The position numbers were made by a program, and so were the translations under genes. A stretch of DNA of 64,000 bases from Hypanus sabinus (lineage: Eukaryota). Below, in pieces: positions 15,722-44,252 of this stretch. Every line of letters begins with the position of its first letter. The first letter of the stretch is position 1. The stretch covers positions 23,126,001 through 23,190,000 of the forward strand of contig NC_082720.1 of the NCBI RefSeq assembly GCF_030144855.1. Reading direction: 5' to 3'. Below the pieces are notes generated by a model. The model was not told the DNA's origin, did no database searches, and saw nothing but the letters and a program-made list of their open reading frames with translations.

Positions 15722-15758
15722 GTAAGCAGCTCAATGTTACATGGTCCTGTGTCAGAAA

Positions 15759-17125: not shown

Positions 17126-17154
17126 ACAGTGAGAAACCCACCTTTCTTGGGCTT

Positions 17155-18449: not shown

Positions 18450-18477
18450 ACAAGCACAACAGTTCTGTTAACCACAA
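18450..18477 (+). CDS. Candidate TIM stalk micro-exon m1A (28 nt, D-KHNSSVNH; alternative 15-nt form 18463-18477)
   Basis: tgtttcttctgttacacag|...ccacaa|gtaagtg. The donor is conserved in copy B (42707). Confidence 0.5.
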
Positions 18478-19462
18478 GTAAGTGATTTATTATACACCAT
18501 GGAAACAATGTTGCTTATTTACATTCTGATAATAATGTAATTTTGTTGGATAAACTGCAATGTTGGTGATAAAAGTTAAAAAAAATATGCATTGAAATTG
18601 ATTTTAATTGAAATTTTTATGTTTAGAACCTTAAGGTTAGGTAAAGATATTTGCAATAAGGACAGGCTGGGAATGTTTGCAGTTAAAGTGAAAGCAAGAT
18701 TTGCATTTTATAAAGTGCCTTTCACACTGAGCAGGCATTGCTTCCACATACAGCGATGTGGTGATGATAATCCTGATTTCATCACCTTGTGGAAATGTGT
18801 CCACAAGGTTTTATGAACAAGCTCAATGAGATGACAAGAACTTGGCAGATGGAACACAATGAAGGAAAATGGGAGATCATCCAATTTAGTACCAATAATG
18901 CACAAGTTGAGTTTTTATTAAATGCTAAGTGATTGTGTGCTGTATTACTTTAGCACCAAGTTGTGATGATACACACATCTCTTCAGGGCCTTGTGCATGT
19001 ACAAATAATAAGTCACCATTTATTATTAGAAGCTTTGAACATTGGAGTAACAGAGTCATACTGTAGTTGTACAGAGTCCTGGCAAGGTAGTGGAGGGTTT
19101 TGGTTTCTTAAGAATGAAAAGTCATACTTGGCATAGAGAGAAACAATTAATAACTGGAGTCACAGATGGCAATTCACAACACCCTTCCCTCACTCTTCAA
19201 TGGAGTGAGTGTTCAATTTATTTTTACAGTTCATGATAAAGTCTTTGTTTGAACACATCATTGGTACATTTGGTCAGAATATACCTAAACTGCCCTTTGC
19301 ATTACCAGGTGTTCAGACATTTACCCTCATTGGCCGGAAATTGCTCACTTATCATTGTTTCTCATAAGCTGAAGGCACAGCAATCTGAGACAGAGTGAAT
19401 ATATATCTGCAGCCTGGATCTGGAACACAGAGTATCAGAATGCTCCCTGTGTTTTCACACAG

Positions 19463-19476
19463 TGATGAACATTCAG
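19463..19476 (+). CDS. Candidate TIM stalk micro-exon m2A (14 nt, N-DEHS)
   Basis: ctccctgtgttttcacacag|tgatgaacattcag|gtgtgggtga. Both splice sites are conserved in copy B. 28+14 nt restores phase 1. Confidence 0.4.
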
Positions 19477-19563
19477 GTGTGGGTGAATCTTTTCTGGTGC
19501 AGCACATCTGAGATTGTCATGTGACAAAAACAAAATTTTAAGTACCATAGAGAGATTCTTAAA

Positions 19564-20360
19564 CAGTGGATTCACTTAATCAGGGAAAGTGTTTATTTGG
19601 GATAAATCTTAAAGAACAAAATCTAAATTGAGAAAATGGCTGGGACTCCTTCATTTATTTGGGACGTTATTCCACTTAATTGAGGTAGGAGATTGTTGCC
19701 GAACAGTTTCTAAATAGGTTTAGACATGTATATTTAGGTATCTGTTAGACACTACACCATACTGAGAGTTATCATTTTTAAAATACCATCACTTGCTTGT
19801 GTTCAAACAGCGGTTACTTTTGTCATTGATAATTGGTGAGAAATAAGCAGTAAGACAGTTTGGAACTGTTTTGTTCATCACAGTTTCAATTATTCAGGAT
19901 TGGAGATGCCAGAAATGGTTGGTAGTGAAAATGGAGCAATATCCCTTCTTCAGCAAGTTGAGAATTACAAAGATATCTACAAATCTGGAATCTCATAATG
20001 AAAATGAAGATTTGTAGAATGCAGTCATTGAAGGCATTGCTGGTTGATTATAATCTGCACTAGACATCTGTACTGATATTGTTTGTTTACAGTCAATTAA
20101 AAAATATGCTGGTTGAGTTCCCTGTTGATAGTACTGTACTGTACTGTACTTATGGTACTGTAGAGGTATTAGTAGTGTTCTAGCATGTTCCTTATTAGCA
20201 TGTTCCTTATTTCATTAAAATGAACAAATTGTGACTCAGTTAAACAGTAATTTGTCTTTTTTATACATTTTAGCTATTTCCATAGAATTTTGGCTAATTT
20301 GGGGAGTTTCTTAATCAGGTCAAAAGGTACTCACCCCGATGTGACCCGGTTAACTGGAAT

Positions 20361-20362
<2 letters not shown>
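19564..20362 (+). mobile_element. Tigger/pogo-like non-autonomous DNA transposon remnant
   Basis: Degenerate inverted ends (cagtggattcacttaat / ttaactggaatc). The internal part recurs at 55720-56090. Confidence 0.45.

Positions 20363-20363
<1 letters not shown>

Positions 20364-20405
<42 letters not shown>
20364..20405. repeat. (TA)n microsatellite
   Basis: Perfect TA run. Confidence 0.97.
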
Positions 20406-20409
<4 letters not shown>

Positions 20410-20499
20410 CAAACTAGGTGAAGACCAACCATTCTGAAAGGTGAGAATGTGACAGATATGACACTTTAACTTTCAATTCATCAATTCTTGCACCTTGGC

Positions 20500-21310
20500 A
20501 AGAGTGAGTATGAGACAAGGTGGTCATCCTGGATCAGTAAGAAATTTCATGGCAGACAAGGTGTGCTGTTACTGCTCTTCTGATCAATCACAAAACAACA
20601 TGCAAGGTTGAAAACCAGAAATAAAGTGGTTGACCACAGACACTGAGTGCAGCAGAAGACAGATACATCAAACTGACGTCCCTTCTAAACTGGAAGAAGT
20701 TTAGTACGGATAACAGCTCCAAAATCACAGAAACACTTGGACCCAAGTACACCCCTCCCCATTTTGGAGAAGTCTTGTCAGAATTCATGGAAGAGTTGTT
20801 GTCAAAATTTCATTCTTATGAAATGGAAACAAAGGCAAAAGTCTCGCCTACACACCAAAAAAAACAAGGACTGGGGTGCTGAACAATGGCAGCCGTTGCT
20901 CTGGACTGATATGGCAAAATGTGAATTTTTGGCTTAAACAGGAAACAGTTTGTTTGTAGAAGAGCTGGAGAGCGCTACTTGGATGAGTGTCTGCAGCCAA
21001 CAGTGAAGCATGGTGGAGGTTCCCTGCAGGTCTGGGGATGCATTTCTGCAAATAGAGTTGGTGATCTGGTCAGAATTAATGGAATCATCAACACTGAGAA
21101 GTGCAAGCAGATTCTCATCTATCGCTCAATACCATCAGTAAGGTGTCTGATTGGTTCCAACTTCATTCTGCAGCAGGACTATGACCCCAAAAACATGACC
21201 AAGCTCCTAAGAAACTATCTTCAGAAAAAAGATGTACAAGGATCTCTGCAAAGGATAAAATGGCCTCTGCAGAGCCCTGATCTTAACATCATCGAGGCTT
21301 TCTGGAATTA
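20500..21310 (+). mobile_element. Tc1/mariner transposase remnant (copy B)
   Basis: ORF 20979-21326 reads VKHGGGSLQVWGCIS...FILQQDYDPK...WPLQSPDLNIIEAFW, containing DD34E-type motifs. Confidence 0.92.
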
Positions 21311-21329
21311 CCACATGGTAAGATAACAA

Positions 21330-22140
21330 CATGTGTGAATGCAGTGGCCTCTCAGGAGCCAAACAAAGGTGCTTTTGTCTTTGTTAAATTTGTACCTTAT
21401 CATCCAAAGACAATTCTTCTCCAAGATCTTCAGGTACTGCAGGGCTACTCCATCAGTGAGCTGCTCAGTAATTGGAGTAGCTGGATTGGTGTCAGTAGCG
21501 GAGCCAGTGAAGGTGCTAAGATATCGGAGGAGCCTGTCGGGATATCGGAGGAACCTGTTGGGATATCAGAGGAGTCAATTTGGGTTCGGAGGAGCCAAGC
21601 TGGCTGCAGACTGTGTTGCTGCCCGCTATTTGGAAGCATCGGAGTTGGCGCAGTATTGCCATGAGAGATTGTCTCAGACATTTCACTTACGATCACAAGA
21701 TTCTGTTGGTCAGTGTTAATGTAAGTTGCCATAGGCCTGCTTCCCTTGTCTGGTGGAGAGAAGGTCGATATGGGAGCTGTGTAGCCTTAGCTGTAGTGTG
21801 ATCTAGGCCTCAAGTCTTGGTCTTGCCTGCTGTTGCAGATCAGGTGAGAGATGTGGAAGTGCTAAAGCACATTTGACAGGCTGAATTGTGTGTTACTGTA
21901 CACTGCCAGGAGACTGTACCATGGATTGCTGGACATTGTCACTCAGGGTCTTGGACTATATATATGTTTTTTTTGGAGTAAATATGCTTTATTGCTCGAT
22001 ACTTTGAATTATGTTACCCATTATTTTTAAATGTTTGCTTCCTATTTTGGATGTTTTGCCCCTTGGCCCTACAGGAACACTGTCTCGTTCAGTTGTACCT
22101 ATGTATGGCTTGAATGATAATTAAATCTGATTTGATTTGA
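21330..22140 (+). repeat. Unclassified repeat with an L2-like tail (longer homologue of 790-1350)
   Basis: Shared sequence and the same neighbours as in copy A. Ends in (tgatt)n. Confidence 0.5.
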
Positions 22141-22349
22141 TTCATCTGGAGAGACAGAAGCAAGCAAGGCAACCAAAGTCTGCAGAAGAACTGTAGGAGT
22201 GAAACAAGAAGTGTCTCACATGTTCTATAAAAAGACAAGCAAGCCTAGATTCCTTTGTGTTCTCATAGCAACGTCTTTAACTTGGAGAAGTGAAAGGACT
22301 TTATAGGAAAGTGAAGAGAAGTGAATGGGAGTGAAAAGAAAAGGAAAAA

Positions 22350-22560
22350 AAAAGAGTACATACATGTCACCACACGCAATACTGAGATTCTTTTTCCTGT
22401 AGGCATACTTAACAAATCTATAGAACAGTAACTGTAAACAGGATCAATGAACAACAAACTAAATAAATAAATAGCAATGAATAATGAGTATGAAATAATA
22501 AGATAAAGAGTCCTTAAAGTGAGACCAGCAGTTGTGGGAACACCAGAAATAGAATGAGAG
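22350..22560 (-). mobile_element. L2 3' tail (copy B)
   Basis: Homologous to 1880-2105. Confidence 0.65.
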
Positions 22561-22564
22561 TCCA

Positions 22565-24560
22565 TGATATTACAGGAAGGATACTAGTGTGGAAAGAGGA
22601 TTGGCTGAGTGGCAGGAGACAAAGGGTGTAAATCAAGGGGCCTATTCTAGTTGGCCACCTGTGACAAGTTGTGTTTTGCAGTGTTCAGAATTGGGACCAT
22701 TTCTTTCTGCATTATGTGCCAATCATTTGTATGATGGAATTGAAAACTTTGTGGTCAAGTTTGCAGATGATACAAAGATAAATGGAGGGTTGTGATGAAG
22801 CAGAGAATCTGCAGAAGGACTTGGACAGATTGGGAGAATGGGCCAAGAAGTGGCAGATGGAATATAGTGAAGGGAAGTGTATGGTCATGCACTTTGGTAG
22901 AAGGGGTAATAGTAGCCTATTTGCTAACTGAGGAGTAAATCAAAAATCAGAGGTGCAAATTGACTTGGGAGTCCTTGTGCAGGATACCCTACAAGGTTAG
23001 ATTTCATTTCGAGAGGACTAGAATAGAAAAGCAATGATGTGATGCTGAGGCTTTATGAGGCATTGGTCAGACCGCACTTGTGAGCAGTTTTGGGACCCGC
23101 TGACATTCAAGAAGGTCCAGAGGAAGTTCACAAGAATGATTACAGGAATGAAAGGGTTAACATATAAGGAGCATTTATTGCTCTGGGCCTCTATCGCTGA
23201 AGTTTAGAAAAATGAGGGAGGATCTCATTGAAACCTATTGAATTTTGAAAGGCAAAGTGGACATAGAGAGAACATTTACTATACTGAGTCAATCTAGGAT
23301 CTAACTGTTATTTGTTAAGCGGGGAGCAGTGCACAATCCTAATCTGATGAAAAAAAGGATGTGGGAGCACGGAGGAACATCTGGAAATCTCCAGGAAGGC
23401 CTTCTTCGTTGCTGCTGCTGCTGTGAGGTCCGGGTCTCTGCTGATAAGAACAAGCCCCCAGTCCTTGGGGTCACGTTGTGGGTGGCTGTTGGCGGGGGCG
23501 TCTTAATGCGCTCAGCAGAGGATGGTCCTCGGAGAGGCTGTGCCAGAGGGGATGGTCAGAGGCTTGGATGTTCGATGGACTCGGAGTCCGCTGCAGTCGG
23601 GGCACTTTCACGGTGTGCTGTGTCTGCGAGGCTGGGTCAGATGGAGCTTTCATTGTATGCTGCATCTGCAAGGCTGAGTCTGGAGGCACCTTGGAAGTCC
23701 ATAGCGGGGGGGTACTCCCTTCTGCCGCCGGCATGGGATGACGAGTCTATCAGGACCCTGAGAACTCGTGGAATCTGTGTGGTGATTTCTTTCGAACTTA
23801 TAGTCTTTTAACATCTTTGGACTATTTTTACTGTGCCCATGGTCTGTTTTTTTTTATCAATTATGGTATTGTCTGCACTGTTGTAACTATATGTTAACTA
23901 TAACTATATGTAACTATGTGATTTTGTGTAGGTCTTGTAGCTTTAGTTTTTGGTTTGTTGGGTGGTAGAGTTGGTCTCTTGATGGTGTGTCTGGGTAGTC
24001 TTGTTTTGTCTGGTGGATTTGGAGGTCCTTTCTGCGAAACACCATACAATGGTAGCGCGATACTAATATGCAGCAGCCTCTCCGGACTCTGGATGGATTG
24101 GGGATTGCCAAACGTTATGTGGATTTTCTGGTGAAGTCTGTTTTGTCACGTGCTTTTGTGATATCATTCTGGAGGAATGTTGTCTCATTTTTTAACTGCA
24201 TTGCATTTGTGGTTTCTAAATGACAATAAACTGAAATTCAATTCAATTCAATTCATAGGGCACAGCTTCAGAATAGAGGGATGTCCATTTAGGTCAGAGA
24301 TGAGAAGGAATTTCTTTAGGCAGAGGGTGGTGAATCTGTGGAGTTCATTGCTATGGACAGCTGTGGAGGTCAGGTCATTGGCTATACTTGAAGCAGAGGT
24401 TTATAGGTTCTTGATTAGTCAGGGCATCAAAGGTTTCAGGGAGAAGAGAAGAGAAGAGAATGGGGTTCAGAGGGATAATAAATTAGCCATAATAGAATGG
24501 TGACATAGACTGGATGGGCTGAATAGTCTAATTCTGCTCCTATGTCTTATAGTCTTTTGG
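22565..24560 (+). mobile_element. CR1 RT-to-3' fragment interrupted by a 0.95-kb insertion
   Basis: KFADDTKI in ORF 22589-22795. The CR1 resumes at ~24255 with GHSFRIEGCPFRSEMRRNFF. Confidence 0.85.
23300..24254 (+). mobile_element. LINE-derived (probably L2-clade) long 3' region, copy B only
   Basis: Ends in tgacaataaactgaaattcaattcaattcaattca. GC-rich interior with no recognisable protein. Confidence 0.5.
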
Positions 24561-24626
24561 ACTTGATGAGAATTATTTCAATTAAAGAAGGATTGAGCCT
24601 GTTGAACAAAGAGATGTGGTAAAATG

Positions 24627-27600
24627 TCTTTTTTTTCACTTTTTTTATTTTTATTGAACACAAACAAGAACAGAAACACTAAACATATGCTAACAAAGCC
24701 AGGGGATCACACATAAGCAGAAACAAATATATAACTATTAACTTTAAATATACAAATAAACAAGAAAATCCATTCTAAATACTGTTGGACAGAAGGAACT
24801 ATATCTAAAAGGAGTCACAAAACAGAAACACTTACAGAGATAACCTGAAACGTTGACAGATTTGTACAGTATTTACAGCTTTCTGGTTATGGGAAGTTTT
24901 CAGAGTATTAACGTATAGTTTGAAGTCTGATGTAAAAAATATAAATGAAGGTTTCTTATTGCTGTATTTGCATTTATGGATATAAAATTTGCTGTAAATT
25001 AACAAAAGATTTATGATAAAGAAATGATCCCTATGAGATTTAGTATTATTAGTAAACCCAAATAAGACATTTTCAAAGCAAAAAGTAAATTCCACATTAA
25101 TATATTGATCTATAAATTGACAAAAATCAACCCAAAATGTTTTAACATATTCACAATCCCAAAACAGATGAAATAAATCCTCCGGATATAAATGTCGAAA
25201 AGAACAGTTAGTTTCAATATCAGAACTAAACCTTGTCAAATAAACATTGGTTGGATAATATCTAAGTATAATTTTAAATGAAATTTCTTTAATTTTATTC
25301 CTCAATAATAATTTAGTAAATAAGCCCCAAATACTCCTCCACCTCAGAATCCCCAAGCGACTATTCCAAAAACGAACAGCCGTAGGAATAGAAGTAACGA
25401 CTTTTTGAAACAAACTTCTAATACCTCTATTATTTTTTTAAAAAGACGGAGAAAGACAAATCTTTCCAACAGCTGTACTGGATGGATCCAAGTTGGGTAA
25501 TTCTACTACCAAATATGATGTATTTCTAAACAACATATTTACACCAGAGGGAATTGCATCCGTAACACCAGCAAATTGTTTTGGAGTCACAGGAAATTCA
25601 AAGGCATATAAAAACCCAGTATAACTCAATAAAGTACCGCTTGAATTAAATAACTGTTTAACGAACAAAATATTATTATCAAACCAGTCTTTATAAAACA
25701 AAGATTCATTCTTATAAGTTATGTTGTGGTTATTCCAGATAAAGTAACTATGAGGAGAAAAATTGTGTTTGTAAATCAAAGACCAAGATAAAAGCATCTG
25801 TTTATGAAACTGAGATAAACGGGGAAGAACTTTGTCTATTTTGTAATTACATAAAAGAAAAAAAATTCAATCCACCAAGCTGGGAAAAGACAAAAGAAGG
25901 AATACAATTCCATATAGAAGGAGGATTATGTAAAAATTGTTTAATCCAATTAATTTAAAAAGTATTATTAAGACTGTCAAAATCAAGAAAATTTAAACCC
26001 CCCCTTGTCATAACTATTCATGACAGCATATTTTTTAATATAATGAACTTTGTTTTTCCATAACAAGTTAAACAACATGGTGTCTATCAATTTACAGATT
26101 TTTTTTATTGACGTATAAGGGGAGAGCTATATATATAATCCTGGAAAGACCTTCTGCTTTACAAAGCAAAACCTGGCCTTTCAAAGATAAGTCACTTTGA
26201 AGCCACTGGTTTAATCTTTTTTGGTTTTGTGTATAAGAGGTTGAAAATTATCCACACACCTTAAGTATTTGTTTTTAACAATAGTTATCCCCAAATATGT
26301 AACTTTGTCTTTTACTGGAATATTATTAATTATCGATTGAGTGCAACTTTTAAGAGGAAACAATTCACATTTGTGAATATTTAAACAGAGGCCTGAGGCT
26401 TTGGAAAAAACAGAAATATGTTTTAAAGCCAATGAGATCTCCGAAACATCATTTAAGTAAAGAATTTTATCATCTGCAAGCTGACTAATCAGAAAATTGG
26501 AATTTGCGCAGGAAATGCCTCTTAGAGGACTAGACTTGATGGAACAGGTGAGCAGCCGAGCACATAAAAGGAATAAATATGGTGAGATAGTACAACCTGG
26601 TCTCCCCCCCCCCCCCCCCATTCACATCAAATTCGGTGAAGTCCCCAACTTCAACTTTATAGAACTATTAGCGTTTGTGTACAAAGCCTTAAAAGCCTTG
26701 CAAAATAATCGACCAAATCCAAATTTACCAAAAGCAGAGAAGGTAAACTGATGCTCAATAGTATCAAAAGCTTGGTAGAAATCTAAAAACAGTTTAAAAC
26801 TATCATTTTGAACAAGATGAGAATAATCAATAAGATCTAAAACTAACCTGACATTATTAGAGATATGACGACCCTTCATGAAACCTGACTGTGTTTCATC
26901 AATAATAAGTGGTAAAAGTACTTTCATTCTGTTAGCAAAGATTTGGGCCAGACTTTTATAATCGCTATTGAGAAGGCAAATAGGATGCCAATTATCGATA
27001 AATAATTTATCTTTTCTTGGTTTAGGAATTAAAGTAATAAGGCCCTGTGTTAAAGAAGTGGGAAGAAATTCTTTATCAATACATTCTAAAAACAATTTTA
27101 GTAAAAAGGGAGCTAGGATGTCAGACAACATCTTACAAAATTCTGCAGTCAGACCATCCACACCCGGCGACTTACTATTTTTAAAATTTGAAACGGCAGC
27201 CTTAACCTCTCCCAAGGTAATAGAAGCATCACACAGGTCTTTCTGATCATTGGACAGGTTCCTAAGAATATTAATATCATTCATGAAATGCAGTGTAGAT
27301 GCTTCACAATATTTTGAGCTATAAGGTTTACTATAAAAAGTAGAACAATATTTTGCTACTTTTTTTAGAATCCTCTGTAATCACACCATCAATATTAAAC
27401 TGATGAATGGAATTGAATTGGGCACGCTGCTTTTCTAAATGAAAGAAATAAGCTGTACTCTGTTCACCCTCTTCCAACCATTGTTTTCGAGATCTCGCAT
27501 ATGCACCTTCTGCCCTTATAAGATAAAGATGGTTTAACTTATCTTTTAACAAAGCCAGCTCCTCTTTATGTTTCCCTGAAAGGTTATCTGGAAACAATTC

Positions 27601-28890
27601 ACATAAATTTGCAATCTTTGAGATTGTTCTTCCAATTTTCTTTTCTTTACTAAATAACAACTGTATTTCCTAAAGAATTTTGCAGATTCAAATATTTAAA
27701 GTTCCCAATTTGTAGAGAAATTATTCTCTACCATCACTTTATGCAAAAATTAGGTTGCCAGCTTTTAATACGCAAAGAGACAACTTCATGCCCCAAAATG
27801 GAATTTTAATTTCCAATAAGATTTAAAATTGGATTCAGCTGAAGATAATGCAATTTGTATATGGATAGCTTTATGATCTGTTAAAGGTGAGGGAAAAATT
27901 TAAATGTGACATTATTATTTCTTAAGGTATTGGATAGTAGCCAGTAATCTAGGCTAGACATGAATGTAATAGATTTATTAGACCAAGTATAATTTCTAAC
28001 TCCAGGAAAGTGCTCTCTCCAACTATCTATGATATTAAACTTCTGAATAAAGCTAGTAAAGTTATTATAAGTAGAGTGTTGCCTTGGTGGCTAATAATCA
28101 AAACGTTTTTCCAAAATCTCAAGTAATCTATCATTATCATTTCTAATATTATAACCATAAATATTAGCAGTAAGAAACATTTTACCACAATATTGTACGA
28201 TAAGACACAAAAAATGACCATTCGTATCCACCTCAGAGTGCAAAACATCTCCTTTAAAGTTAAACATTAGAATAAGAACACCTGCAGAATGTTCAGAACC
28301 ATGTGAAAACTAAACTTCGTTCCCCCACTGGGATTTCCATAGTTTAATGTCTTAATGTCTTTAACAGTCAGAGTGTGACTGTTGGTTTAAAAAGAAGTCC
28401 ACATGTTTATGCTGCTTTACAAACAAGAATAAAGCCTTATGTTTAACAGTGTGTCTAAGTTCCCTGGCATTAAGAGAAAAAAGTGAAAAGACAGTCTTAT
28501 GAGAGGCTATATATATATATATATACATATATATATACACACACACAAAAAGAATTCCCATCTCTAATAATAACAGTGAAAAAAAACTATCCCAGTCCTA
28601 TATGAATAAAGGTCAGACTCGAATATTTGTAAAGGTAGTAGACCGGTTGCCACACCAAGATGTTATTGTTCTGCTCGTATCTCTTTTACATCAATGAAAG
28701 CTCAGGTCCCAGCAAAGAAAGCATGCTTCCCATCTTTTCTAGCAGCCTCCACCAGTGGCCACAGCTTCTGTCGGGCCAACTTATCAGCTGCAGTCAGGTC
28801 CTCGGTGATCCTTAGGCTCTGCGAGAGCAAGTATTCATTGTGAATTAGTGATTTCATACTTCTGCCATCTTGCAGTCATTACCTATAGTA
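24627..28890 (-). mobile_element. Decayed L1/Tx1-type LINE (ORF1 end, endonuclease, RT, Cys/His C-terminal domain, A-rich tail)
   Basis: Minus-strand ORFs: FSLNARELR (endonuclease), KSPGVDGLTAEF...FLDFYQAFD (RT), PGCTISPYLF, ISQLADD, and CSF...HLFWDC. An ORF1-like ITEDLTAADKLARQKLWPLVEAARKDGK lies at ~28690-28860. Confidence 0.92.
28508..28549. repeat. (TA)n/(CA)n compound microsatellite
   Basis: Direct reading. Confidence 0.85.
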
Positions 28891-29479
28891 TCTTCCAGTC
28901 TCCCATTCTCTCTCCCTTCCCCAGTTCCCTGACTCACTGCCCACGAATATTGACCATTAGTGTAGGAGAGACAGAAAATATTCTATCAATCACAAGTGGG
29001 TTAATATTTTAGGATACTGAGACCATTTGGTCTTTATCAGATTGTGTGACCAACTCCAGATATTGTAACGTTTCAATCAGTAGCATCCATACAAACTTTG
29101 TGTACAGCTGTGCAAAATCTGGGGACAATAAATCAGTCACTTTGAATAGAATGAAAAGTACCTTAGCTCTGAAATGGAGAACGTGTTGGAAAAGCATAGG
29201 ATTAGCAGTCACTGGGACAAGTGTAGTTTGTTTAGAAACATCTGGTGTGGCTTTGTTAAAGACTAATGGTGTCTAAGTAATACTATACAATTCTTGATGA
29301 GGAAACAGGATCACTGAGGGAAATACAGTTGATGAATATATGTACTTCCAACAAGTATTAAATAACGTGTTACATTTGTACGCAGCTATAGTTTTGGTGC
29401 ACATCTTGGTGGGCATAAATGACATGGACCTATTTCCATGCTATATTACTTTATACTCAGTTATAGGATTTTCATCAAG

Positions 29480-32399: not shown

Positions 32400-32690
32400 A
32401 ATATAGGGGCATCCATTTACAGCACAGATGAGGAGCAATTTCTTAAGCCACAGAGTGGTAATTCTGTGGAATTCAGTCATTGCAACAACTGGCTGTGGAG
32501 GCGAGGTCATTAGGTTCATTTAAAGCAAAGGTTGATAAGTCCTTGATTACTCAAGGCATGAAATGTCACGGGGAGAAGTCTGGAAAATGAGACTGAAAGG
32601 TAAAATGGATCAGCCATGATGAAATGGAGGAGCAGATTCAAGAGGCAGAATGGCCTAATCCTGCTCCTATCCCTTCTGGTCTAATGATGG
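32400..32690 (+). mobile_element. CR1 3' end (copy B of 6710-6955)
   Basis: ggggcatccatttacagcacagatgagg...gcctaatcctgctcctatc. Confidence 0.75.
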
Positions 32691-35090: not shown

Positions 35091-35224
35091 GTGCTGACAA
35101 GATACTGGGAAGAAGGCATTTCATGTGCCAGTGTTTCAGTCTCACTTGGAGTCTTCCCCTCCTCTCTCTTTTCTGGCCATGGTGATGTATCTTTGCAGGC
35201 TTAAAGCTGCTGTACCTGCATGCT

Positions 35225-36900
35225 TAAGAGTTCAGAATCAAAATCAGGTTTATTATCACCAGCATGTATCGTGAAATTTGTTAACTTAGCAGCAGTAGTT
35301 CAGTGCAATGCATAATATAGAAGAAAATAAATTAATAAATAAATAAATTGATCATTAAATAATTAAGGAATTACATTATATGTATATTGAATAGATTAAA
35401 AATCATGCAAAAACAGAAATAATATATATTTAAAAAAGTGAGGTAGTGTCCCATGATACAATGCCCATTTAGGAATCAGATGACAGAGAAGAAGAAGCTG
35501 TTCCTGAATTGCTGACTGTGTGCCTTCAAGCTTCTGTACTTCTTACCTGATAGTAACAATGAGAAAAGGGCATGCCCTGGGTGCTGGGGGTCCTTAATAA
35601 TGGACACTGCCTTTCTGAGACACCGCTGCTTGAAGATGTCCTGAGTACTTTGTAGCCTCGTACCCAAGATGGAGCTGACTAAATTTACGACCCTCTGCAG
35701 CTTCTTTCGGTCTTGTGCAGTAGACACGTTCCATGCAATGATGTAGCCTGTCAGAATGCTCTCCACGGTACCTCTGTAGAAGTTTTTGAGTGTTTTCGTT
35801 GATACACCAAATCACTTCAAACTCCTAATGAAGTATAGTCCCCGTCTTGCCTTCTTTATTGCTGCATCAATATGTTGGGACCAGGTTAAGTCCTCAGAGA
35901 TCCTGATACCCAGGAACTTGAAACTGTTCACTCTGTCCACTTCTGATCCCTCTGTGAGGTTTGGTATGTGTTACTTCATCTTACCCTTCCTGAAATCCAA
36001 AATCAGCTTTTTTGCCTTACTGATATTGAGTGCCAGGTTGTTGCTGTGACACCACTCCATTAGTTGGTATATCTCGCTCCTGTACGCCAACTCGTCTCCA
36101 TCTGAGACTCTACCAATAATGTTTATATCATCAGCAAATTTATAGATGGTATTTGAGCTATGCCTAGCCACACAGTCATGGGTGTAGAGAGCTAAGCACA
36201 CATCCCTGAGGTGCACAAGTGTTGGTGGTCAGCAAGGTGGAGATATTATCACTAATCCACACAGATTGTTGTCTTCCAGTTAGGAAGTCGAGGATCCAAT
36301 TTCAGAGTGAAGTACAGAGGCCCAGGTTCTGCAACTTCTCAATCAGGATTGTCGGAATGATGATGTTAAATGCTGAGCTATAGTCAATGAACAGCATCCT
36401 GACATGGGTGTTTGTGTTGTCCAGGTGGTCTAAAGCTGTGTGGATTGCCATTGATATTGCATCTGGCTTTGACCTATTGTGGCAATAGGCAAAATACAAT
36501 GGGTCCATGTCCTTGCAGAGGCAGGAGTTCAGTCTGGTTATGATGAGTTTCTCAAAGCATTTCATCATTGTAGATGTGAGTGCTACTGGACGATAGTCAT
36601 TAAGGCAGCTCACATTATTCTTCTTAGGCACTGGTATAATAGTTGCCCTTTTGAAGCAAGTGGGAACTTCTGCCTGTAGCAGTGAGAGGTTGAAAATGTC
36701 CTTGAATACTCCCATCAGTTGGTTGGCACAGGTTTTCAGAGCCTTACCAGGTACTCCATCGGGGCCTTCCTCCTTGCGAGGGTTCAACTTCTTTAACGAC
36801 AGCCTAACATCAGCCTCCAAGACAGAGATCACAGGGTCATTGGGTACAGCAGGGATCTTCACAGCTGCAGTCATATTCTCCCTTTCAAAACGGGCATAGA
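35225..36900 (-). mobile_element. Younger 5'-truncated L2 LINE, copy B only
   Basis: ORFs 36302-36874, 35971-36216 and 35476-35766(-) give GPDGVPGKALK, LNDYRPVALT, YKFADD and KDPQHPGHALFSLL. Tail near 35225-35270. Confidence 0.92.
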
Positions 36901-37213
36901 ATGCGTCCAGTCATAAGTCCACCAAGTCCTTCAGAAGATCGTGAAATCACTAATTCGTTAAGGTGGTTGAAATTCAACATCAGGCTACAGATTGCAGTCA
37001 GAGTAGTTCAGAAGAAGTGTATTTAGAAGTTTTGTAACCTGCCTGTAACACGTCGCCATGATTCATCAGCACCTTCTTTGCTCTCATCTTTGCATATAGA
37101 GTGAAAACAACTGGGTTCTCAGTACAATTGCATTGGACCCAGCACTTACTCAATCTGTTTACCTCACTGTTTTATTACTGTAACAAGAGCATTCCTGTGT
37201 ACTACTCCCAGTG

Positions 37214-37771
37214 CAGGTTTCCCCAGCAATCCGAAGGTAGAGTGTTCCGATGAAACAGTTTGTAAGCGGAAATGTCGTAAAGCGAAGAAGCAATTACCAT
37301 TAATTTATATGGGAAAAATTTTTGAGCATTCCCAGACCCAAAAAATAGCCTACCAAATCATACCAAATAGTACATAAAACCTAAAATAACACTAACATAT
37401 AGTTAAAGCAGGAATGATACGATAAATATACACCTTATATAAAGTAGAAATATTGTATGTATGGTGTAGCTTCACTTATCAAAATCGGGAAGACAGCGAG
37501 CCAAAGTCGATTTGGAGGAAAAAAATCGGCACGTACACGCATATGTACACACGTGTGTATGCACGTTCATGCATATGCACATACACGCATGTGCCCGCAC
37601 AAGGTTTCACGGTTATTGTAGTCTTTCTCGGGGTAAACACATGTATAAAGTGGGCGTCTTTTTTTCGTAAAAGCGAAAATCCTCTTTGGTTAGCAAAAAT
37701 GGGTTCTAATGTAGGTCTTTCGTAACAGTGAGTTGTCGTAAAGCGAATGTTCGAAAAATGGGGGACACCTG
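37214..37771. mobile_element. Tigger-like MITE, copy B only
   Basis: Imperfect inverted ends caggtttcccc / ggggacacctg. Empty site at ~10140 in copy A. Confidence 0.65.
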
Positions 37772-38957
37772 TGTATTCTTTTGTTGAATTGTGGAAACAT
37801 GAAAGGCACTTTGAACATGTGTATACATCTCACTTACCAGTTCTCTGTATCTAATTTAGTTCTAGGTGAGTCATTGATTGAGAAAGATGAATGAGCTCAC
37901 GAACATAAAAGTAAATGAACTTTCTTCTGTTACAGAGGCCAGCATAAATCTCCTTCACCCACAATTGTGTCCTTTTCTACAGATCTTGGAAATAATATTG
38001 TCTCATTTGCAGGATCAGTCTAAAGCTTCCAGACATTACAAGTTATCTTCTAAACGATGATATTAATGAAATTTTTCATTAGTGTAAACTGCACAATTTA
38101 ACTGTAGGTGGTCAAAGTGGACAAGAGTGCCTTGAAATTGATTTTAATTTAAATGTTTATGTGTAGAACATTCAGAATTATGGTGGCTTTAACTGAGATA
38201 AAGTATTGCAAAAGGGTAGGTTAGGAATGCTTGTGATTGGATTGAGAATTAGTTTTGCTTTTTATAAAGTGCCTTTCATATTGTCAGGTTATCCACTATC
38301 CCAAAGCACTGAACAAAAAATGAGGAACTAACTTTAAGAAACAGCTTTGTGGCTGTTACCATATTTGGATGGTGATATCAATTTTTATTAGCGTTGAGTA
38401 AGAGCTAATTTTGGTCAGGAAATGAGGTTATTTCTCATTTTCTGCAGTATTCCCTTGAGATCTCTTACACTCACCTCAAACAAGCCACAAGGCTACAAGT
38501 TTATTTTACATCTGGAAGATAGGTTGTGTCTTTAGTCTGACGAAGTTGAGTCTGTTTGTATCAGCATACTTCCAACTTGCGTGGAGGACTTAACATTTAG
38601 GAACCTCTCTCAGTATTCAATACAATTGGAATCAGATTTATTGGCACTGACTATTGTCATGAAATTTGACGTTATATGGCAGCAGTACAGTACAAAGATA
38701 TAATTATTTTCTTTATTTTGAGATACAGCACAGTAACAAATACCTCCCCAAAAACCACAAGTGTGTAAATCATTCCATCCCCTTTCTAGCCAAGGGGCTA
38801 GACTTGATCTCATATTAGGAAATAAGCTGGGAAAATATTTGATTTGTTCACTGGTATGATGACACTTTGTGATCAGTGACCAGAATTAAATGAGTTTTAA
38901 GGTAGCATAGACAAAGATGTGATCCAATATAATGTTAACGGGGGAAATGCAGTGACA

Positions 38958-39064
38958 TGCCAAAGGGTCTCTGGCTGAAGCATCGACTGTACTCCTTTCC
39001 GGCATGCTGCCTGACCAGCTGAGTTCCTCCAGCATTTTATCTATGTTTCTCAGATTTCTAGCAT
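38958..39064 (+). repeat. Short remnant of a Penelope/SINE-type terminal repeat
   Basis: aagggtctctggctgaagcatcgactg...tgctgcctgaccagctgagttcctccagca. Family assignment is from recall. Absent from copy A. Confidence 0.45.
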
Positions 39065-39099
39065 GGGCAGATTTACTCTTGTTTGCAAAAGTCTAATTT

Positions 39100-41820
39100 T
39101 GATGGCATTAAACAGGAATTCTTAAAAGTTGATTGGAAGAGGTTGTTTTCAGGTAAGGGGACATCAGGTAAATGGTAAGCATTTAATTATTGAAACAGAA
39201 ATGTAGAAAACCTGCATCACAATACAGGCCCTTTGGTCCACAAAGTTGTGCCAAAAAGTTGTACCTTAGAAATTACTAGGCTTACCCATAGCCCTCTATT
39301 TTACTAAGCTCCATGTGCCTATCTAAAAGTCTCTTAAAAGACCCTATTGTATCTGCCTCTTTCAAGCGCCTGTGCAGTCTCACCTCTCTTTTACCCCGAG
39401 TAGTAAAAAACTCTCTTCTCTCTGAAAAATCAGACGTTTACTCGCAGCCTTCTTGCTCCGCATTGGCAGGAAGACCAGCACCAGCATGTTCCTGTTGGAG
39501 TGATATGCAAGGTTGGTAAAACTAGGGAGCCTGGTTGATAAAGGTTGTGGAGGAGCTGGTCAGGGAAAAGAAGGAGGCAAGTGTCAGCTGACTTCAAGCA
39601 ATTATTATTTATGAGGATGTTGGATGTAAGAACACACTTGAGATTGAAATTAGAAGGGCAAAGAGGGACCACGAGGTATCTCTGGCAGATAGAATAAAGG
39701 AGATCATTAAAGATTCCATCAGTATACTAAGAATAAAAGAGCAGCTGGAGGGAGAATTGGTTCTCAAATGTGGTAACCTGAATGTTGCATGATGGGAAAT
39801 GGATGAGGCCTTCATTGGAATTGGTATTGGTTTATTTGTTGTCACATCTGTTGATACAGTGAGACGTAGATCAGACAGATCAAATGATTAGATAAAGCAG
39901 TGTCACTTTCCAGACCCTGAAGGAATATATATTTTGTGTCTGCCTTTATGGAGAATGGCATGGAAGTTAATGATTTCAGGAAAGGGAACAGTGATATCCT
40001 GGAACATATGAAGATTTTAATGAAGAGGGATTTGAGTTTTTGAAATGGACATGTAACTGTATGAGGAGGACATAGAAGGGTAAGAAATTAATTCAGCAAG
40101 TGGGATTAGTATAGAGAGTCATGATGGTTAGTATAGATGCCTTGCGCAAAAGGGCCTGTTTTTATGCTGTACAACTCCATGATTCTAAGATGGAGAGCTT
40201 TAAGGAGGAAATAAACTACAACATGATTTGACTGAATTCATTGATTTCAGTGTAGTACCAAGTATTTTGTCTTAGTCCATATGGTGCATGTTTGATTGTG
40301 ACTCCGAGGAAGGACATTTGGACCCATTGAGTCTGTGCCAGCAAACTAATCCGTTCCCTGATGACCTCTTATCCCTACATTCCCTGCATTCATGTCAACA
40401 CACACTCCCCCTCCCCCAGATTCTGCCACTCACCTAAATCCAAGGGATAATTCACAGCAGCCAATTAACCCACCAAATCACCCACCTTTGAGATGTGGGA
40501 GGGAAACAGAGCTTTCAAAGAAAACCCACGTCATTACAAGGACAATATACAAAATCCACACTAGCAGCACCTTTAATAATTACAACAACTATGGCTGTTG
40601 ACAAAGATTAAGTTTAATGTGAACAACTGAAGTTTGGAATGATGTCATATGAACCATTGTAAGTTACATGCAGGGGGCCAAGTAGTAATGTGAAAATTGC
40701 AGTTCAGGACTCTGCCATGACCTTTTGCAAAGGTCTAGGTTAAATGTGCAAGGTTAAGTCACTTAGTATCCAGGGAGAGATAATGGATTAGATTCATAAT
40801 TGGCGCAGCGGTGGGAAGCAGAGGGTAATGATCAAGTGTTGTTTCTTGGACTGGAGACCTGTGTCTAGTGGTGTGCCAGAGGGGTTGGTGCTGGAAACTT
40901 TGTTAAAAGTAACTTATCTAAGTGGTTTAGATATGAATGTCCACAGCATGGTCAGTAAGTTTGGGAATAATATTAAAATAGGTGGCATTGTAAATGGTGT
41001 CAAAAGTTATGAAAAAATGCAGGATAATTTTGAGCAACTAGATATGTGCACTGAACATTGGCAAGTGGCTTTTAATCCAGAAATACGTGAATTATATCAT
41101 TTTGTGAGATTAAACCAAGGTGGAATTTATACAGTAAATGGTAGTGTCCTGGGGCGTGTTTTGGAAGAGAGGGACCTAGAAATACAAGTATATTATTCAC
41201 TGAAAGCTTTGTCGCAGGAGATAGGATGGTGAAGAGGACATTTGGCATGCTGACCAACAATCAGAGTATAGAAGTAGGGAAATTATGATGTAATTATGTA
41301 AGCCATTGGCGAGGCTTCACTTGGAGTATTGTGTACAGCTTCGGTCACCATTTCGTAGGAAAAAATATCATTAAATTAGAAAAATGCAAAAAAAGATTTA
41401 CCAGATATTGCCTGGACTTGGTGCGTGAGATACTGCAAAGACTAGGATCTATACCCTGGAATGCAGGAAACCATGCCCTGACTGATGGATAATGAGAGGC
41501 AGAGACACGGTGAAAGCACGCAATCCTTTTCCTAGGGAAGGGCTGCTAAAAACAAGAGGGCATATTTTTAAGATCAAAGACAACAAGTTTATAAGGAAAA
41601 TCAGGGGAAGCCTCGTGTTAAGGGTGCTGGATATTTGGAATGAGCTGCCAAGAATTTTGGTTGGGGTGGGGACATTTAGCAACATTTAAAAGACATCTAG
41701 GTAAGTACATGGATCGGAAAGGTTTAGACAAGCCTCTGTGGATGGGCTCATGGGACAACACAGTCAGCATAGACAAGTTGTGGTAAAGGAGCTGTTTCCA
41801 TGCTGTTGTTTGTCTCTGAC
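39100..41820 (+). mobile_element. CR1 fragment cluster (copy B of 11350-13440), with a minus-strand SINE at ~40310-40570
   Basis: ORF 40828-41232 has WRPVSSGVPEGLVLETLL...SKFGNNIKIGG. Confidence 0.8.
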
Positions 41821-41893
41821 TCTATATAGTTCAGTATGGAGCTTGTTTGAACAAGTGACCAATGGGAATCATTGGTCCCTGGAATGGATGTTG

Positions 41894-42181
41894 TTCTTCT
41901 TCTTCAGTTGTCCGTCAATTTTTCGATGATGACTGAGGCCTGGGCAAGGTTGTATGGAAGACCTGCAGTTGCCCATGCTGCAAGTCTCCCCTCTCCACAC
42001 CACCAAGCTTATCCAAGGGAAGGGTATTAGGACTGATACAGTTTGGCCCTTGTGTCATCACAGAGCAATGTGTGGTTAACTGCCTTGCTCACGGACACAA
42101 CACGCTGCCTCAGCTAAGGCTCAAACTAACGACTTTCAGATCACTAGACACACGCCTTATCCACTTGACCACGTGCCACAC
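41894..42181 (-). mobile_element. tRNA-derived SINE with an 11-bp TSD, copy B only
   Basis: TSD aatggatgttg at 41883-41893 and 42182-42192. The reverse complement begins gtgtggcacgtggtcaagtgg (tRNA-like head) and ends in a (gaa)n tail. Empty site at ~13500. Confidence 0.85.
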
Positions 42182-42239
42182 AATGGATGTTGTAGTGATG
42201 CAGGGTTTAGCTCACATAATTTTACAACTTCCTGCAGTT

Positions 42240-42550
42240 CAATTCAATCCTGTGCAGTAGCTCCCCGCCAACCCCCATACTAGACGGTGAAGTAGCTGGA
42301 AATGTAGTCTGTACATACGTAGAAATTTGTGAGTATTTTAGGTGACACACCAAAATTCTCAAACTCCTAATGAAATATAGCCACTGCCTTGTCTTCTTTA
42401 CAGCTGCATCGATATGTTGGGACCAAGTTAGTTCCTCAGAGATATTTACACCCAGGATTTTGAAATTGCTCACTCTCTCCACTTCTGATCCCTCTATGAG
42501 GACTGGTGTGTGTTCCCTCAACTTACCCTTTTTACAGTCCACGATCAGCT
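42240..42550 (-). mobile_element. L2 RT fragment at the junction where copy B lacks leader and IgV
   Basis: ORF 42222-42542(-) has VERVSNFKILGVNISEELTW...RQWLYFIRSL. Confidence 0.8.
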
Positions 42551-42691
42551 CTTTTAATAACTACTTCAGTTTTCTGTTCAATGTAACACAATGGATAAAC
42601 TTGAAATGAGTGAATAATAGGGTATGACTTAGTTTTGACCAACAGAAAAATAAATGTAATGTTTCTTCCGTTACGTGCACCCACTAAACAG

Positions 42692-42706
42692 CTCCATTAA
42701 CCATGT
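42692..42706 (+). CDS. Candidate stalk micro-exon m1B (15 nt, A-PLTM)
   Basis: gtttcttccgttac...aaacag|ctccattaaccatgt|gtaagtg. Homologous to 18463-18477; phase 1-1. Confidence 0.4.
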
Positions 42707-43505
42707 GTAAGTGCTTTATTACACACCATGGAAATGATCATGCTTATTTACATCTCTGATATTAATGTGTTTTGGATAAACTGCACAGGTGTTGATAAAA
42801 GTTAAAAAGTGTGCCTTGAAATTGCTTTTAATATAAATATTTATGTTTAGAATCTTAAGATTCGGTGAAGGTATTTGCATAAGGACAGGCTGGGAAAGTT
42901 TGCAATTGAAGTGACAGTGAGACTTGCACTCTACGAAACGCCTTTCTCACTGAGCAGCCAAAGGGGAACCTATTTCCACAGAGAGGGATGTGGTAAGGAT
43001 CAGATGTAGATCATGACTGTATATTTTTAAATTTAATTAATTATTGGCCAAGAATGGAGGTAATTTTTTTGTTCATGAAAATAATCAAAGTCGTGACAAT
43101 ATGGAAAGATCTTAATTTGACAAAATTAATGGTACTGTGTCTGGTCATAGCATTTGCAACAAGGTAAACAAATCAATGACACAAATAGAAGTACTGTAAT
43201 CCTAATTTCATCACGTTGTGGAAATGTGTCAACAATTTTTTATGAACAAGCTCAGTGAGATGATAAGAACTTGGCAGATGGAACACAAAGAAGAAAAATG
43301 GGAGATCATCCAATTTTGGAAAAAGTCGAGTTTTCATTCGATGCTAAGAGATAGGGTGGTGCTGAAACTTTAGGAATAAGGTGTGATGATACACACGTCT
43401 CTTCAGGCCATTGTGCAGGTGCAAATATTAAGTCACCATTTATGATAAGAAGCTTTGAACATAGGAGTAACAGAGTCAAACTGTAGTTGCACAGAGTCTT
43501 GGCAA

Positions 43506-43693
43506 GGGGCTAGCAAACCCATTCCATAAAAACTCAGAGCTACAGAAACTCCAAACTTCTCATCACTGGGAAAGGAAGGAACACCACCATGTCCTACACC
43601 TGTGGATGGTTAGAAAGATTGGTTCAGGACAGAGGCTTCTAGTCACATACTCTTGGTGGCCAATGCCCCAGAAGGGATGATGGTTTTAACTAA
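43506..43693. mobile_element. Short insertion with a ~15-bp imperfect TSD, copy B only
   Basis: cagagtcttggcaag / cagagtcttgccaag flank the insert. The single site in copy A is at ~19073. Confidence 0.5.
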
Positions 43694-43898
43694 CAGAGTC
43701 TTGCCAAGATTGCTCTGGGAAGGTAGTGGAGAGTTTTGGTTTATTGACAATGAAAAGACATACTTGCCATTGAGAGAGAACAATGAATAACTGTAGTCAC
43801 AGATGGCAATTCACCTCACCCTTCCCTCACTCTTCAATGGAGTGAGTGCTCAATTTATTGTTTGAACATGTCAGTGGTCCACTTGGACAGATTATATC

Positions 43899-44085
43899 TG
43901 TGATGAGAGACCTAGGCGAGGATGGTTAGTACCCATGTGCTGGAGTATCTGAAACTAGAATCGAGACATGGCCGCCAATCGGGTCAGGCCTGAGTCTTTA
44001 AAGAGGCCGTGCCAGCTATCCATATTCTGGAGAGTTTAAGTGCCTAAACCCCGGAAGCTGGCGTGGTTGGGTGCTTGTCATAGCA
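43899..44085. mobile_element. Short TG...CA solo-LTR-like insertion, copy B only
   Basis: Starts tgtgatg, ends tagca, flanked by atatc / gtatc. Absent at ~19280 in copy A. Confidence 0.45.
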
Positions 44086-44237
44086 GTATCTGAACTGCCC
44101 TTTGCCCTTTGGAGGCTGCTAACTTATCATTGTTTCTCATCAATGGGAAGCACAGCAATCTGAGAGAGGGTGAATCTATGTCTGGAGCCTGGATCTGGAA
44201 CACTGAGCATCAGAATGCTCCCTGTGTATTCACACAG

Positions 44238-44252
44238 CAGCTGAACATTCAG
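44238..44252 (+). CDS. Candidate stalk micro-exon m2B (15 nt, S-AEHS)
   Basis: ctccctgtgtattcacacag|cagctgaacattcag|gtgtgggtga. Phase 1-1 with a NAGNAG acceptor. Confidence 0.4.

What the first reader, a model, noticed from the sequence alone, without database searches (positions are those of the whole stretch)
18450..44252. Candidate stalk built from tiny micro-exons whose frame shifts cancel
Seen: two short AG/GT-bounded segments follow the IgV exon in copy A (28 nt at 18450-18477, 14 nt at 19463-19476), and their splice signals recur in copy B (15 nt at 42692-42706, 15 nt at 44238-44252). The B pair are each phase 1-1. The A pair are each out of frame but sum to 42 nt. Joined in order after the IgV exon they read ...RVSD-DKHNSSVNHNDEHS-APLTM-SAEHS with no stop and an NSS sequon. 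Established: mammalian TIM stalks come mainly from one long Thr-rich mucin exon. Inference: here the stalk may be assembled and length-tuned from duplicated micro-exons over more than 25 kb, with the A pair obligately co-included. Using the 15-nt acceptor at 18463 instead gives a stop in m1B, predicting a secreted IgV form.
Basis: partly seen in the sequence, partly recalled or inferred. Interest (0 to 1): 0.7.

Follow-up and report, generated by a model that had tools for sequence, protein, structure and literature searches.

The report
Dead stalk-exon stumps in stingray TIM gene
The four tiny "exons" sit in a giant intron of an already catalogued Atlantic stingray TIM/HAVCR1-like immune receptor gene; one is a spliceable stump of an old duplicated stalk exon, the others have no support, and the catalogued stalk comes from ordinary 84-base exons further downstream.

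Summary
The window holds the 5' half of Hypanus sabinus LOC132405377, a HAVCR1-like gene spanning 95.5 kb. Its exon 1 (14814-14865) and IgV exon (15374-15721) match RefSeq isoforms X1 and X2 at 100%.

In X1 and X2 the IgV exon joins stalk exons that lie beyond the window. These are 28-residue (84-nt, inferred) S-type exons, and one of them is a cassette that distinguishes X1 from X2. All four micro-segments are skipped.

- **m1A:** It is read in another frame (TSTTVLLTT), after an alternative first exon (15809-15898), and joins directly to a far-downstream exon, not to m2A.
- **m1 origin:** a DNA paralogue of the S-type stalk exon. It carries a 2-nt deletion at its start, has lost its 3' end, and has an internal GTAAGT. 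All of this is shared with sawfish, so the stump is old.
- **m2:** no protein support. Its block is inverted and lacks the AG in sawfish. The 14-nt length of m2A is a derived deletion, so 28+14=42 is specific to copy A.
- **m1B:** weak splice sites.

No RNA reads could be obtained. The scan has already described neighbouring parts of this TIM cluster.

The parts
14814..14865 (+). Exon 1 coding part (signal peptide MALTGSVAHLPIVFLLL + G, phase 1) of Hypanus sabinus LOC132405377
   Evidence: 100% identical to residues 1-18 of X1/X2 (P0287, P0092). Donor TTAG|gtacgt.
15374..15721 (+). IgV exon (phase 1-1), TIM type with six cysteines and a WFND loop
   Evidence: Pfam V-set E 1.4e-16. Best PDB match is mouse TIM-1 2or8, E 2.9e-36. 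100% identical to X1/X2. It is the only IgV exon in the window.
15809..15898 (+). Alternative first coding exon of isoform X3 (MQVRSQTPVLSVWESCFPLVHPDARTSQEQ), starting 87 nt after the IgV donor
   Evidence: 100% identical to residues 1-30 of P0169 = XP_059846120.1. Donor CAG|gttggt scores 6.2.
18450..18477 (+). m1A: 28-nt exon used in X3, read as TSTTVLLTT plus one base. It is the 5' stump of the decayed S-type stalk exon copy S2A.
   Evidence: P0169 residues 31-39, with K40 made from A + AA of the next exon. Acceptor 10.3, donor 8.5. Homologous to S exon copies. The same 28-nt interval between cag| and |gtaagt is present in sawfish at L001 13880-13907.
18478..18540 (+). Remainder of the decayed S2A exon, now intronic. 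In the S frame it reads SK*FIIHHGNNVAYLHS. The original 3' end and donor are deleted.
19463..19476 (+). m2A: 14-nt AG/GT-bounded segment, in no annotated product
   Evidence: Acceptor 9.4, donor 9.0. Has a 1-nt deletion relative to m2B and sawfish. Absent from all proteins fetched.
42692..42706 (+). m1B: 15-nt stump of the S2B copy. The original acceptor is lost and the sites are weak.
   Evidence: acceptor 1.3, donor 4.2. blastn to the S1B region gives E 3e-8.
44238..44252 (+). m2B: 15-nt AG/GT-bounded segment. This is the ancestral length (14/15 identical to the sawfish block).
10322..10393 (+). S1A: intact-looking S-type stalk exon copy (72 nt, phase 1-1, APSSIMIESFSTTYGNNIAPLAYQ) lying upstream of exon 1
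   Evidence: S-exon HMM iE 6e-9. Acceptor 9.7, donor 6.2. Collinear with the sawfish S1 exon region.
37949..38008 (+). S1B: broken S-type exon copy in unit B (frameshift, donor GT changed to AT)
   Evidence: HMM iE 5.6e-9. Sequence read.
246..20570 (.). Repeat unit A. The segment 13512-18417, which holds exon 1, the IgV exon and the X3 exon, has no counterpart in unit B.
   Evidence: Self-BLAST.
20574..62800 (.). Repeat unit B, about 80% identical to A and enlarged by LINE insertions. It lies wholly inside the intron that follows the IgV exon. Unit C starts at 62820.

Best explanation
The window carries the 5' half of an annotated Atlantic stingray TIM-1/HAVCR1-like gene (LOC132405377). After the signal and IgV exons comes an intron of more than 48 kb. 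It contains LINEs and decayed tandem copies of parts of the gene's own repeat unit.

The four micro-exons are debris in this intron, not the stalk.

- **m1A and m1B** are the 5' stumps of an old extra copy (S2) of the 28-residue S-type stalk exon. Before the sawfish and stingray lineages split, this copy lost 2 nt at its start, so it no longer fits the phase-1 exit of the IgV exon. It also lost its 3' end and donor, and it carries an internal GTAAGT 28 nt after the old acceptor. In copy A both sites are still strong. RefSeq's minor isoform X3 splices it in, in the old S frame, behind an alternative first exon that lacks the signal peptide and IgV.
- **After the IgV exon**, m1A alone would shift the frame relative to S'. 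In sawfish the equivalent join runs into a stop inside the next exon.
- **m2A and m2B** are AG...GT segments with good consensus. They lie in a block that is inverted in sawfish, and nothing shows they are used.
- **The annotated stalk** is made from two S-type exons of 28 residues each (84 nt inferred; S' optional, S constitutive) plus further exons, all downstream of the window.

Shown here: exon identities, the homologies, the frames and the sawfish comparison. Inferred: that X3 reflects real RNA, and that m2A, m1B and m2B are not included in mRNA.
For: - P0092/P0287 (X2/X1) match exon 1 and the IgV exon at 100%. None of their post-IgV residues is encoded in the window.
- The gene range is 95,469 bp.
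- X1 minus 28 residues equals X2.
- X3 (P0169) is 15809-15898, then 18450-18477, then S'.
- m1 blocks match S exon blocks. blastn gives E 6e-10 and 3e-8. The local alignment scores 39, against 18 +/- 2.6 in shuffles, with 0 of 200 shuffles reaching it.
- In the S frame, m1A reads TSTTVLLTTSK*FIIHHGNNVA, against ray TSTTSPSTTIESLSTDHGNDIA.
- Sawfish L001 has the same cag|28 nt|gtaagt, and a normal 84-nt S1 exon at 17281-17364. IgV + m1-like + S1 gives a stop within S1.
- The m2 block is inverted in sawfish, with CACACAC in place of CACACAG.
- m2B is 14/15 identical to sawfish, while m2A has a 1-nt deletion.
- No fetched protein carries the micro-exon peptides.
- A-to-B conservation of the blocks is not an outlier.
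Against: - No RNA reads could be examined, so minor transcripts that include m2A, or the A pair together, cannot be excluded.
- m1A(28), m2A and m2B score as well as genuine exons in my rough matrix.
- 28+14=42 and 15+15 all preserve the phase-1 frame with no stop. The chance is about 1-4% if the choices had been made blind.
- m1's AG, GT and 28-nt spacing survive in sawfish, which could reflect constraint rather than slow decay.
- X-numbered RefSeq models are predictions. I could not see their supporting evidence.
Confidence: 0.6

Rival explanations
1. One reading: IgV joins m1A, m2A, m1B and m2B in order, and these micro-exons build and length-tune the stalk.
For: The frames cancel and no stop arises. 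Three of the four have strong sites.
Against: - No annotated isoform or relative has these peptides.
- X1 and X2 go from the IgV exon straight to S-type exons of 28 residues outside the window.
- m1B has weak sites and has lost the original acceptor.
- The m2 block is inverted in sawfish.
- The micro-segments are the least conserved part of their blocks.
Confidence: 0.03
2. Only the A pair is used together. IgV-m1A-m2A-S' gives an in-frame isoform with 14 extra residues (DKHNSSVNHNDEHS) ahead of the normal stalk. The 1-nt deletion in m2A is a compensating change.
For: 28+14=42 restores phase 1, which is what S' requires: X1 reads G+AA=E and X3 reads A+AA=K. Both segments have strong sites. m1A's sites are used in X3.
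Against: It is not annotated. X3 joins m1A directly to S', skipping m2A. The ancestral m2 length is 15 nt and the block is inverted in sawfish. The chance of a sum divisible by three is 1/3.
Confidence: 0.1
3. m1 is a conserved frame-shifting cassette (a 'poison' or switch exon). Its inclusion after the IgV exon yields an NMD target or a truncated soluble IgV, and so tunes receptor output.
For: AG, GTAAGT and the 28-nt length are shared by sawfish and stingray. The flanks are 0.73-0.90 identical, against 0.69 for the whole block. Inclusion gives a stop in sawfish S1. The sites are demonstrably usable according to X3.
Against: Other stretches of the same intron alignment are equally or more conserved. 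The B copy has decayed. The sawfish model skips it. There is no RNA evidence.
Confidence: 0.12
4. None of the four is ever spliced. X3 is an annotation artefact built on thin or spurious evidence.
For: X3 lacks the signal peptide and IgV, and starts at an ATG in intron sequence 87 nt after the IgV donor. It is a predicted model named 'uncharacterized protein'.
Against: Gene predictors rarely place a 28-nt exon with exact consensus sites between introns of 2.5 kb and more than 45 kb without spliced-read support (my own knowledge of how such pipelines work, not tested here). The site scores are high.
Confidence: 0.15

Closest known systems
Chicken TIM4 (chTIM4) multi-exon gene with five splice variants (PMC4913284, read)
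   Same: A non-mammalian TIM gene. Its region between IgV and TM is spread over several exons, isoforms differ by skipped exons and by a later donor in exon 3, and V exons are duplicated.
   Different: The chicken variants were cloned as cDNA. The exons involved are ordinary in size and none is a 14-28 nt exon. Here only database models are available.
RefSeq isoforms X1, X2 and X3 of Hypanus sabinus LOC132405377 (XP_059846118.1, XP_059846119.1, XP_059846120.1)
   Same: This is the same gene. Exon 1, the IgV exon, the X3 first exon and m1A in the window are the annotated exons.
   Different: The annotation contains nothing that corresponds to m2A, m1B or m2B, nor an IgV>m1A junction.
Mammalian HAVCR1 mucin-length variants (PMC11592376, title and abstract only)
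   Same: Variation in TIM-1 stalk length is a recognised functional variable.
   Different: As far as I know, that variation comes from insertions and deletions inside one mucin exon, not from alternative exons.
Neuronal and other vertebrate microexons of 3-27 nt (my own knowledge, not tested here)
   Same: Size range, and strong flanking splice signals.
   Different: Classical microexons are mostly multiples of three, deeply conserved in sequence and orientation, and seen in RNA. Here m1 is 28 nt and frame-shifting, m2 is not conserved in orientation, and RNA evidence is lacking.
Pseudo-exons or exon relics from tandem exon duplication, and frame-shifting 'poison' cassettes (my own knowledge)
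   Same: m1 is a truncated duplicate of a neighbouring exon that keeps its acceptor, uses an internal donor, and breaks the frame when included.
   Different: Regulated use has not been shown.

Membership tests
TIM / HAVCR family receptor | N-terminal IgV domain of TIM type with six cysteines | tested here: met
   V-set E 1.4e-16. The top PDB matches are TIM-1, TIM-4, TIM-3 and TIM-2, with E from 3e-36 to 4e-23. Six Cys are visible in the exon translation.
TIM / HAVCR family receptor | FG-loop WFND motif of the metal-dependent phosphatidylserine pocket | tested here: met
   EIPGWFNDLK aligns with mouse TIM-1 EIPGWFNDQK. Binding itself was not tested.
TIM / HAVCR family receptor | [quoted passage not shown] | tested here: met
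   Seen in the annotated products X1 and X2: TSTASPSTTTESPS..., LYLSIGLLLLITVASIIAIIFL, EENIYQISE. These exons lie outside the window.
Functional microexon | Very short segment bounded by usable acceptor and donor sites | tested here: met
   m1A(28), m2A and m2B score 8-10 bits (acceptor) and 8.5-9 bits (donor) in a rough matrix. m1B does not.
Functional microexon | Present in mature mRNA | tested here: inconclusive
   m1A is in the predicted isoform X3 only. m2A, m1B and m2B are in no model and in none of 291 relatives.
Functional microexon | Conserved in position, orientation and splice sites in related species | tested here: not met
   m1 is conserved in sawfish (AG, GTAAGT, 28 nt). m2 is inverted and lacks the AG. 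Within the genome, copy B of m1 has lost the acceptor.
Functional microexon | Preserves the reading frame of the host mRNA | tested here: not met
   m1A is 28 nt and m2A is 14 nt. Each alone shifts the frame after the IgV exon. Only the pair in copy A sums to 42, and that rests on a derived deletion.

The most novel reading that the evidence does not exclude
m1 is not mere debris. It would be an old truncated duplicate of the stalk exon, shared by sawfish and stingray, kept as a 28-nt frame-shifting switch exon. Included after the IgV exon, it would give NMD or a soluble IgV-only TIM. In stingray copy A, a 1-nt deletion in m2A would create a compensating partner that turns the switch into an in-frame 14-residue insert.
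Probability: 0.1. Interest if true: 0.5.

Novelty: already known. Interest (0 to 1): 0.22.

Why it matters
The evidence points instead to an ordinary picture for a fast-duplicating immune gene cluster: a catalogued TIM gene with a huge intron full of dead copies of its own exons. One of those copies can still be spliced into a minor, probably non-productive transcript.

Three points are useful. The annotated stalk of this gene is length-tuned by an optional S-type exon of 28 residues, not by micro-exons. The m1 stump predates the sawfish-stingray split. And strong consensus splice sites around tiny segments occur by chance at about 2-3 per 64 kb, so they need RNA evidence before being called exons.

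Tried and rejected
1. **RNA evidence.** I stopped there and sent no window letters from those stretches to any DNA-pattern, genome, paper or findings search afterwards. Later protein searches used public protein ids (P0003, A3, P0092).
2. **Joined spliced model.** It was not searched as a whole. Only short frame checks were done in scripts.
3. **m2 as a stump of the next stalk exon (ASSAGTTEGILSS...).** Rejected. An ungapped BLOSUM scan ranks the m2 read-through at about 40,000 of 128,000 positions.
4. **A relic of that exon at 19544-19579 (IERFLNSGFT).** It is the top hit of a shark+ray HMM, but only at iE 0.93. I leave it open.
5. **Similarity of m1A's DKHN...HN to NKHNAIHNK in the real stalk.** Judged coincidental, because m1 is homologous to the S exon in another frame.
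6. **TM or cytoplasmic exons inside the window.** None found by tblastn, k-mers or HMMs.
7. **Whether unit B lost exon 1 and the IgV exon, or unit A gained them.** Unresolved. There are no remnants in B.
8. **Genomic DNA for the red stingray, manta and Atlantic stingray loci.** Not available because the files were too large. Only sawfish DNA was returned.
9. **Rfam and tRNA scans of the window.** Empty.


Full report
**Observation.**
- IgV exon: 15374-15721, ending GAC G|gtaagc, phase 1.
- m1A: 18450-18477 (28 nt).
- m2A: 19463-19476 (14 nt).
- m1B: 42692-42706 (15 nt).
- m2B: 44238-44252 (15 nt).

All four are bounded by AG and GT. Read from the carried G, the order gives DKHNSSVNHN-DEHS-APLTM-SAEHS without a stop. 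The internal acceptor at 18463 leads to TAA in m1B. These points are confirmed.

**What the window is.** Self-comparison shows a tandem repeat.
- Unit A spans 246 to about 20570.
- Unit B spans about 20574 to 62800. It is about 82% identical to A and is enlarged by LINE insertions.
- Unit C starts at 62820.

There is only one IgV exon. It lies in a 4.9-kb segment (13512-18417) that unit B lacks. The IgV translation is a TIM-type V domain: V-set E 1.4e-16, best solved relative mouse TIM-1 at E 2.9e-36, with six cysteines and WFND. Earlier notes of this scan named the genome as the Atlantic stingray and its TIM cluster as already catalogued.

I confirmed this for the present gene. RefSeq proteins of Hypanus sabinus LOC132405377 match exon 1 (14814-14865) and the IgV exon at 100%.
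- X1: XP_059846118.1, 278 aa.
- X2: XP_059846119.1, 250 aa.
- X3: XP_059846120.1, 184 aa.

**The annotated stalk.**
- In X2 the IgV is followed by GTSTASPSTTTESPSTDNGSDITPSIYQ (exon type 'S'), then ASSAG...NYP, a TM helix, and a tail ending EENIYQISE.
- X1 has one more S-type unit, ETSTTSPLTIIDSFSINYGNNIAPFVYQ (S'), between the IgV and S. X1 minus these 28 residues equals X2. S' is therefore a 28-residue cassette. Its 84-nt, phase 1-1 size is inferred from the sawfish S1 exon.

None of these post-IgV residues is encoded anywhere in the window. The gene range on record is 95,469 bp. The intron after the IgV exon therefore runs from 15722 past the window end. That is more than 48 kb, and all of unit B lies inside it. 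The Mobula orthologue spans 91.7 kb.

**m1.** Isoform X3 starts with 30 residues encoded at 15809-15898. This is 87 nt after the IgV donor, and the match is 100%. It continues with TSTTVLLTT, which is exactly 18450-18476 in frame 0. The last base, A, is completed by the AA of S' to give K. The same AA gives E after the IgV's G in X1. However, it is read in another frame, follows a first exon without signal peptide or IgV, and joins directly to S', skipping m2A, m1B and m2B.

The m1 blocks are DNA paralogues of the S-type exon together with its flanks.
- blastn of m1A and m1B against the S copy at 37.9 kb gives E 6e-10 and 3e-8.
- A local alignment scores 39, against 18 +/- 2.6 in shuffles.
- In the S frame, m1A and what follows read TSTTVLLTTSK*FIIHHGNNVA. 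Ray S exons read TSTTSPSTTIESLSTDHGNDIA.

The window also holds two other S copies. One at 10322-10393 looks intact but lies upstream of exon 1. One at 37949-38008 is broken.

**Sawfish comparison.** The Pristis pectinata locus (L001) is collinear with the stingray from exon 1 through the m1 block. It has a normal 84-nt S exon at 17281-17364. Upstream of that, at 13880-13907, it has the same cag|28 nt|gtaagt arrangement as m1A, with 20/28 identity.

Relative to the S exon, both species share three changes: a 2-nt loss at the exon start, an internal GTAAGT, and loss of the original 3' end and donor. This extra S copy was therefore already unfit for the IgV phase before the two lineages split. 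In sawfish, IgV + m1-like + S runs into a stop inside S. Conservation of the m1 block between the species is 0.73-0.90, somewhat above the alignment mean of 0.69. It is matched by other intronic stretches.

**m2.**
- No protein among the 291 fetched contains DEHS, AEHS or APLTM.
- The m2 block has no other paralogue in the window.
- Its only sawfish counterpart is on the opposite strand relative to the TIM gene, and it has CACACAC where the stingray has the CACACAG acceptor.
- m2B (15 nt) is 14/15 identical to the sawfish block, while m2A carries a 1-nt deletion. The 28+14=42 property is therefore recent and specific to copy A.
- A-to-B identity of the m2 block (0.90) is within the background spread.
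- An attempt to derive m2 from the next stalk exon failed.

**Chance.** With a rough matrix of my own, built on consensus frequencies from memory, m1A(28), m2A and m2B score like the real IgV exon. m1B and the 18463 acceptor are poor. Such candidates are not rare: there are 5 on this strand, against 2.65 +/- 1.8 in Markov-1 simulations. The open joined frame has a chance of about 0.32, and the frame arithmetic a few per cent at best, after post hoc choice of acceptors.

**Verdict.** The strings are real, and one of them (m1A) is a catalogued exon. The proposed micro-exon stalk is not supported. The most likely account has four parts:
- m1 is an ancient stump of a duplicated stalk exon. It is still spliceable and is used in a minor, probably non-productive transcript.
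- m2 is a fortuitous AG...GT segment.
- The B pair is a decayed duplicate of the A pair.
- The annotated stalk is made from 28-residue S-type exons (84 nt inferred) beyond the window, one of them optional.

Multi-exon, alternatively spliced TIM stalks are already documented in chicken TIM4 (PMC4913284).

**Limits.**
No reads were laid, and no junction was tested. I sent no window letters of those stretches to search tools afterwards.
- The joined spliced model was not searched as a whole. Exons were treated one by one by reference.
- DNA of the closer relatives (red stingray, manta) and of the stingray gene beyond the window was not obtainable.

Noticed in passing
window 10322-10393 (+): An intact-looking S-type stalk exon copy lies 4.4 kb upstream of exon 1. 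It is 72 nt, phase 1-1, acceptor 9.7, donor 6.2, and reads APSSIMIESFSTTYGNNIAPLAYQ. It cannot serve this gene's IgV. It may belong to the upstream neighbour or be unused.
   Followed up: partly
window 15203-15272 (+): Open alternative leader exon MLVRFPPSSFVIFRNIPHMPPT(G), with donor ACAG|gtaaca in phase 1, 100 nt upstream of the IgV exon. It is 88% identical to the annotated first exon of the neighbouring gene's isoforms (P0163 = XP_059846113.1, P0288, P0289). It is not annotated for this gene.
   Followed up: partly
window 15722-15898 (+): If the IgV donor is read through, the frame stops after 16 codons (..SD-GKQLNVTWSCVRNGGLAV*). The X3 first exon starts just beyond. X3 could therefore derive from a transcript with a later donor at 15898, whose upstream ORF would be a secreted IgV-only protein. 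This is speculation.
   Followed up: no
window 14290-14492 (+), 6207-6401 (-), 63770-63898 (-): A repeated element in the window matches, at 76-82% for the copy at 14290-14492 and about 44% for the other two, the odd N-terminal insert of a Hemitrygon akajei TIM model (P0089 residues 18-89). That model probably has repeat sequence annotated as coding.
   Followed up: no
window 48657-51583 (+), 24832-27284 (-), 36302-36874 (-), 2132-2596 (+): LINE fragments (endonuclease and reverse-transcriptase ORFs). They account for much of the extra length of unit B.
   Followed up: partly
L001 37335-37403 and 40038-40148: The sawfish model P0088 reads the TM exon out of frame: RKHGTSALSWHWL... instead of ENTELPLYLGIGLLFLISV..., the frame that ray proteins match. 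The preceding exon of about 70 nt shifts the frame, so either the model or the gene is defective downstream.
   Followed up: no
window 19544-19579 (+): IERFLNSGFT* resembles the start of the second stalk exon of sharks (EEFLNSTFTT). It is the top hit of a small HMM in the whole window, but only at iE 0.93. It may be a relic about 70 nt after m2A.
   Followed up: partly
window 20364-20405: A (TA)21 microsatellite near the junction of units A and B.
   Followed up: no
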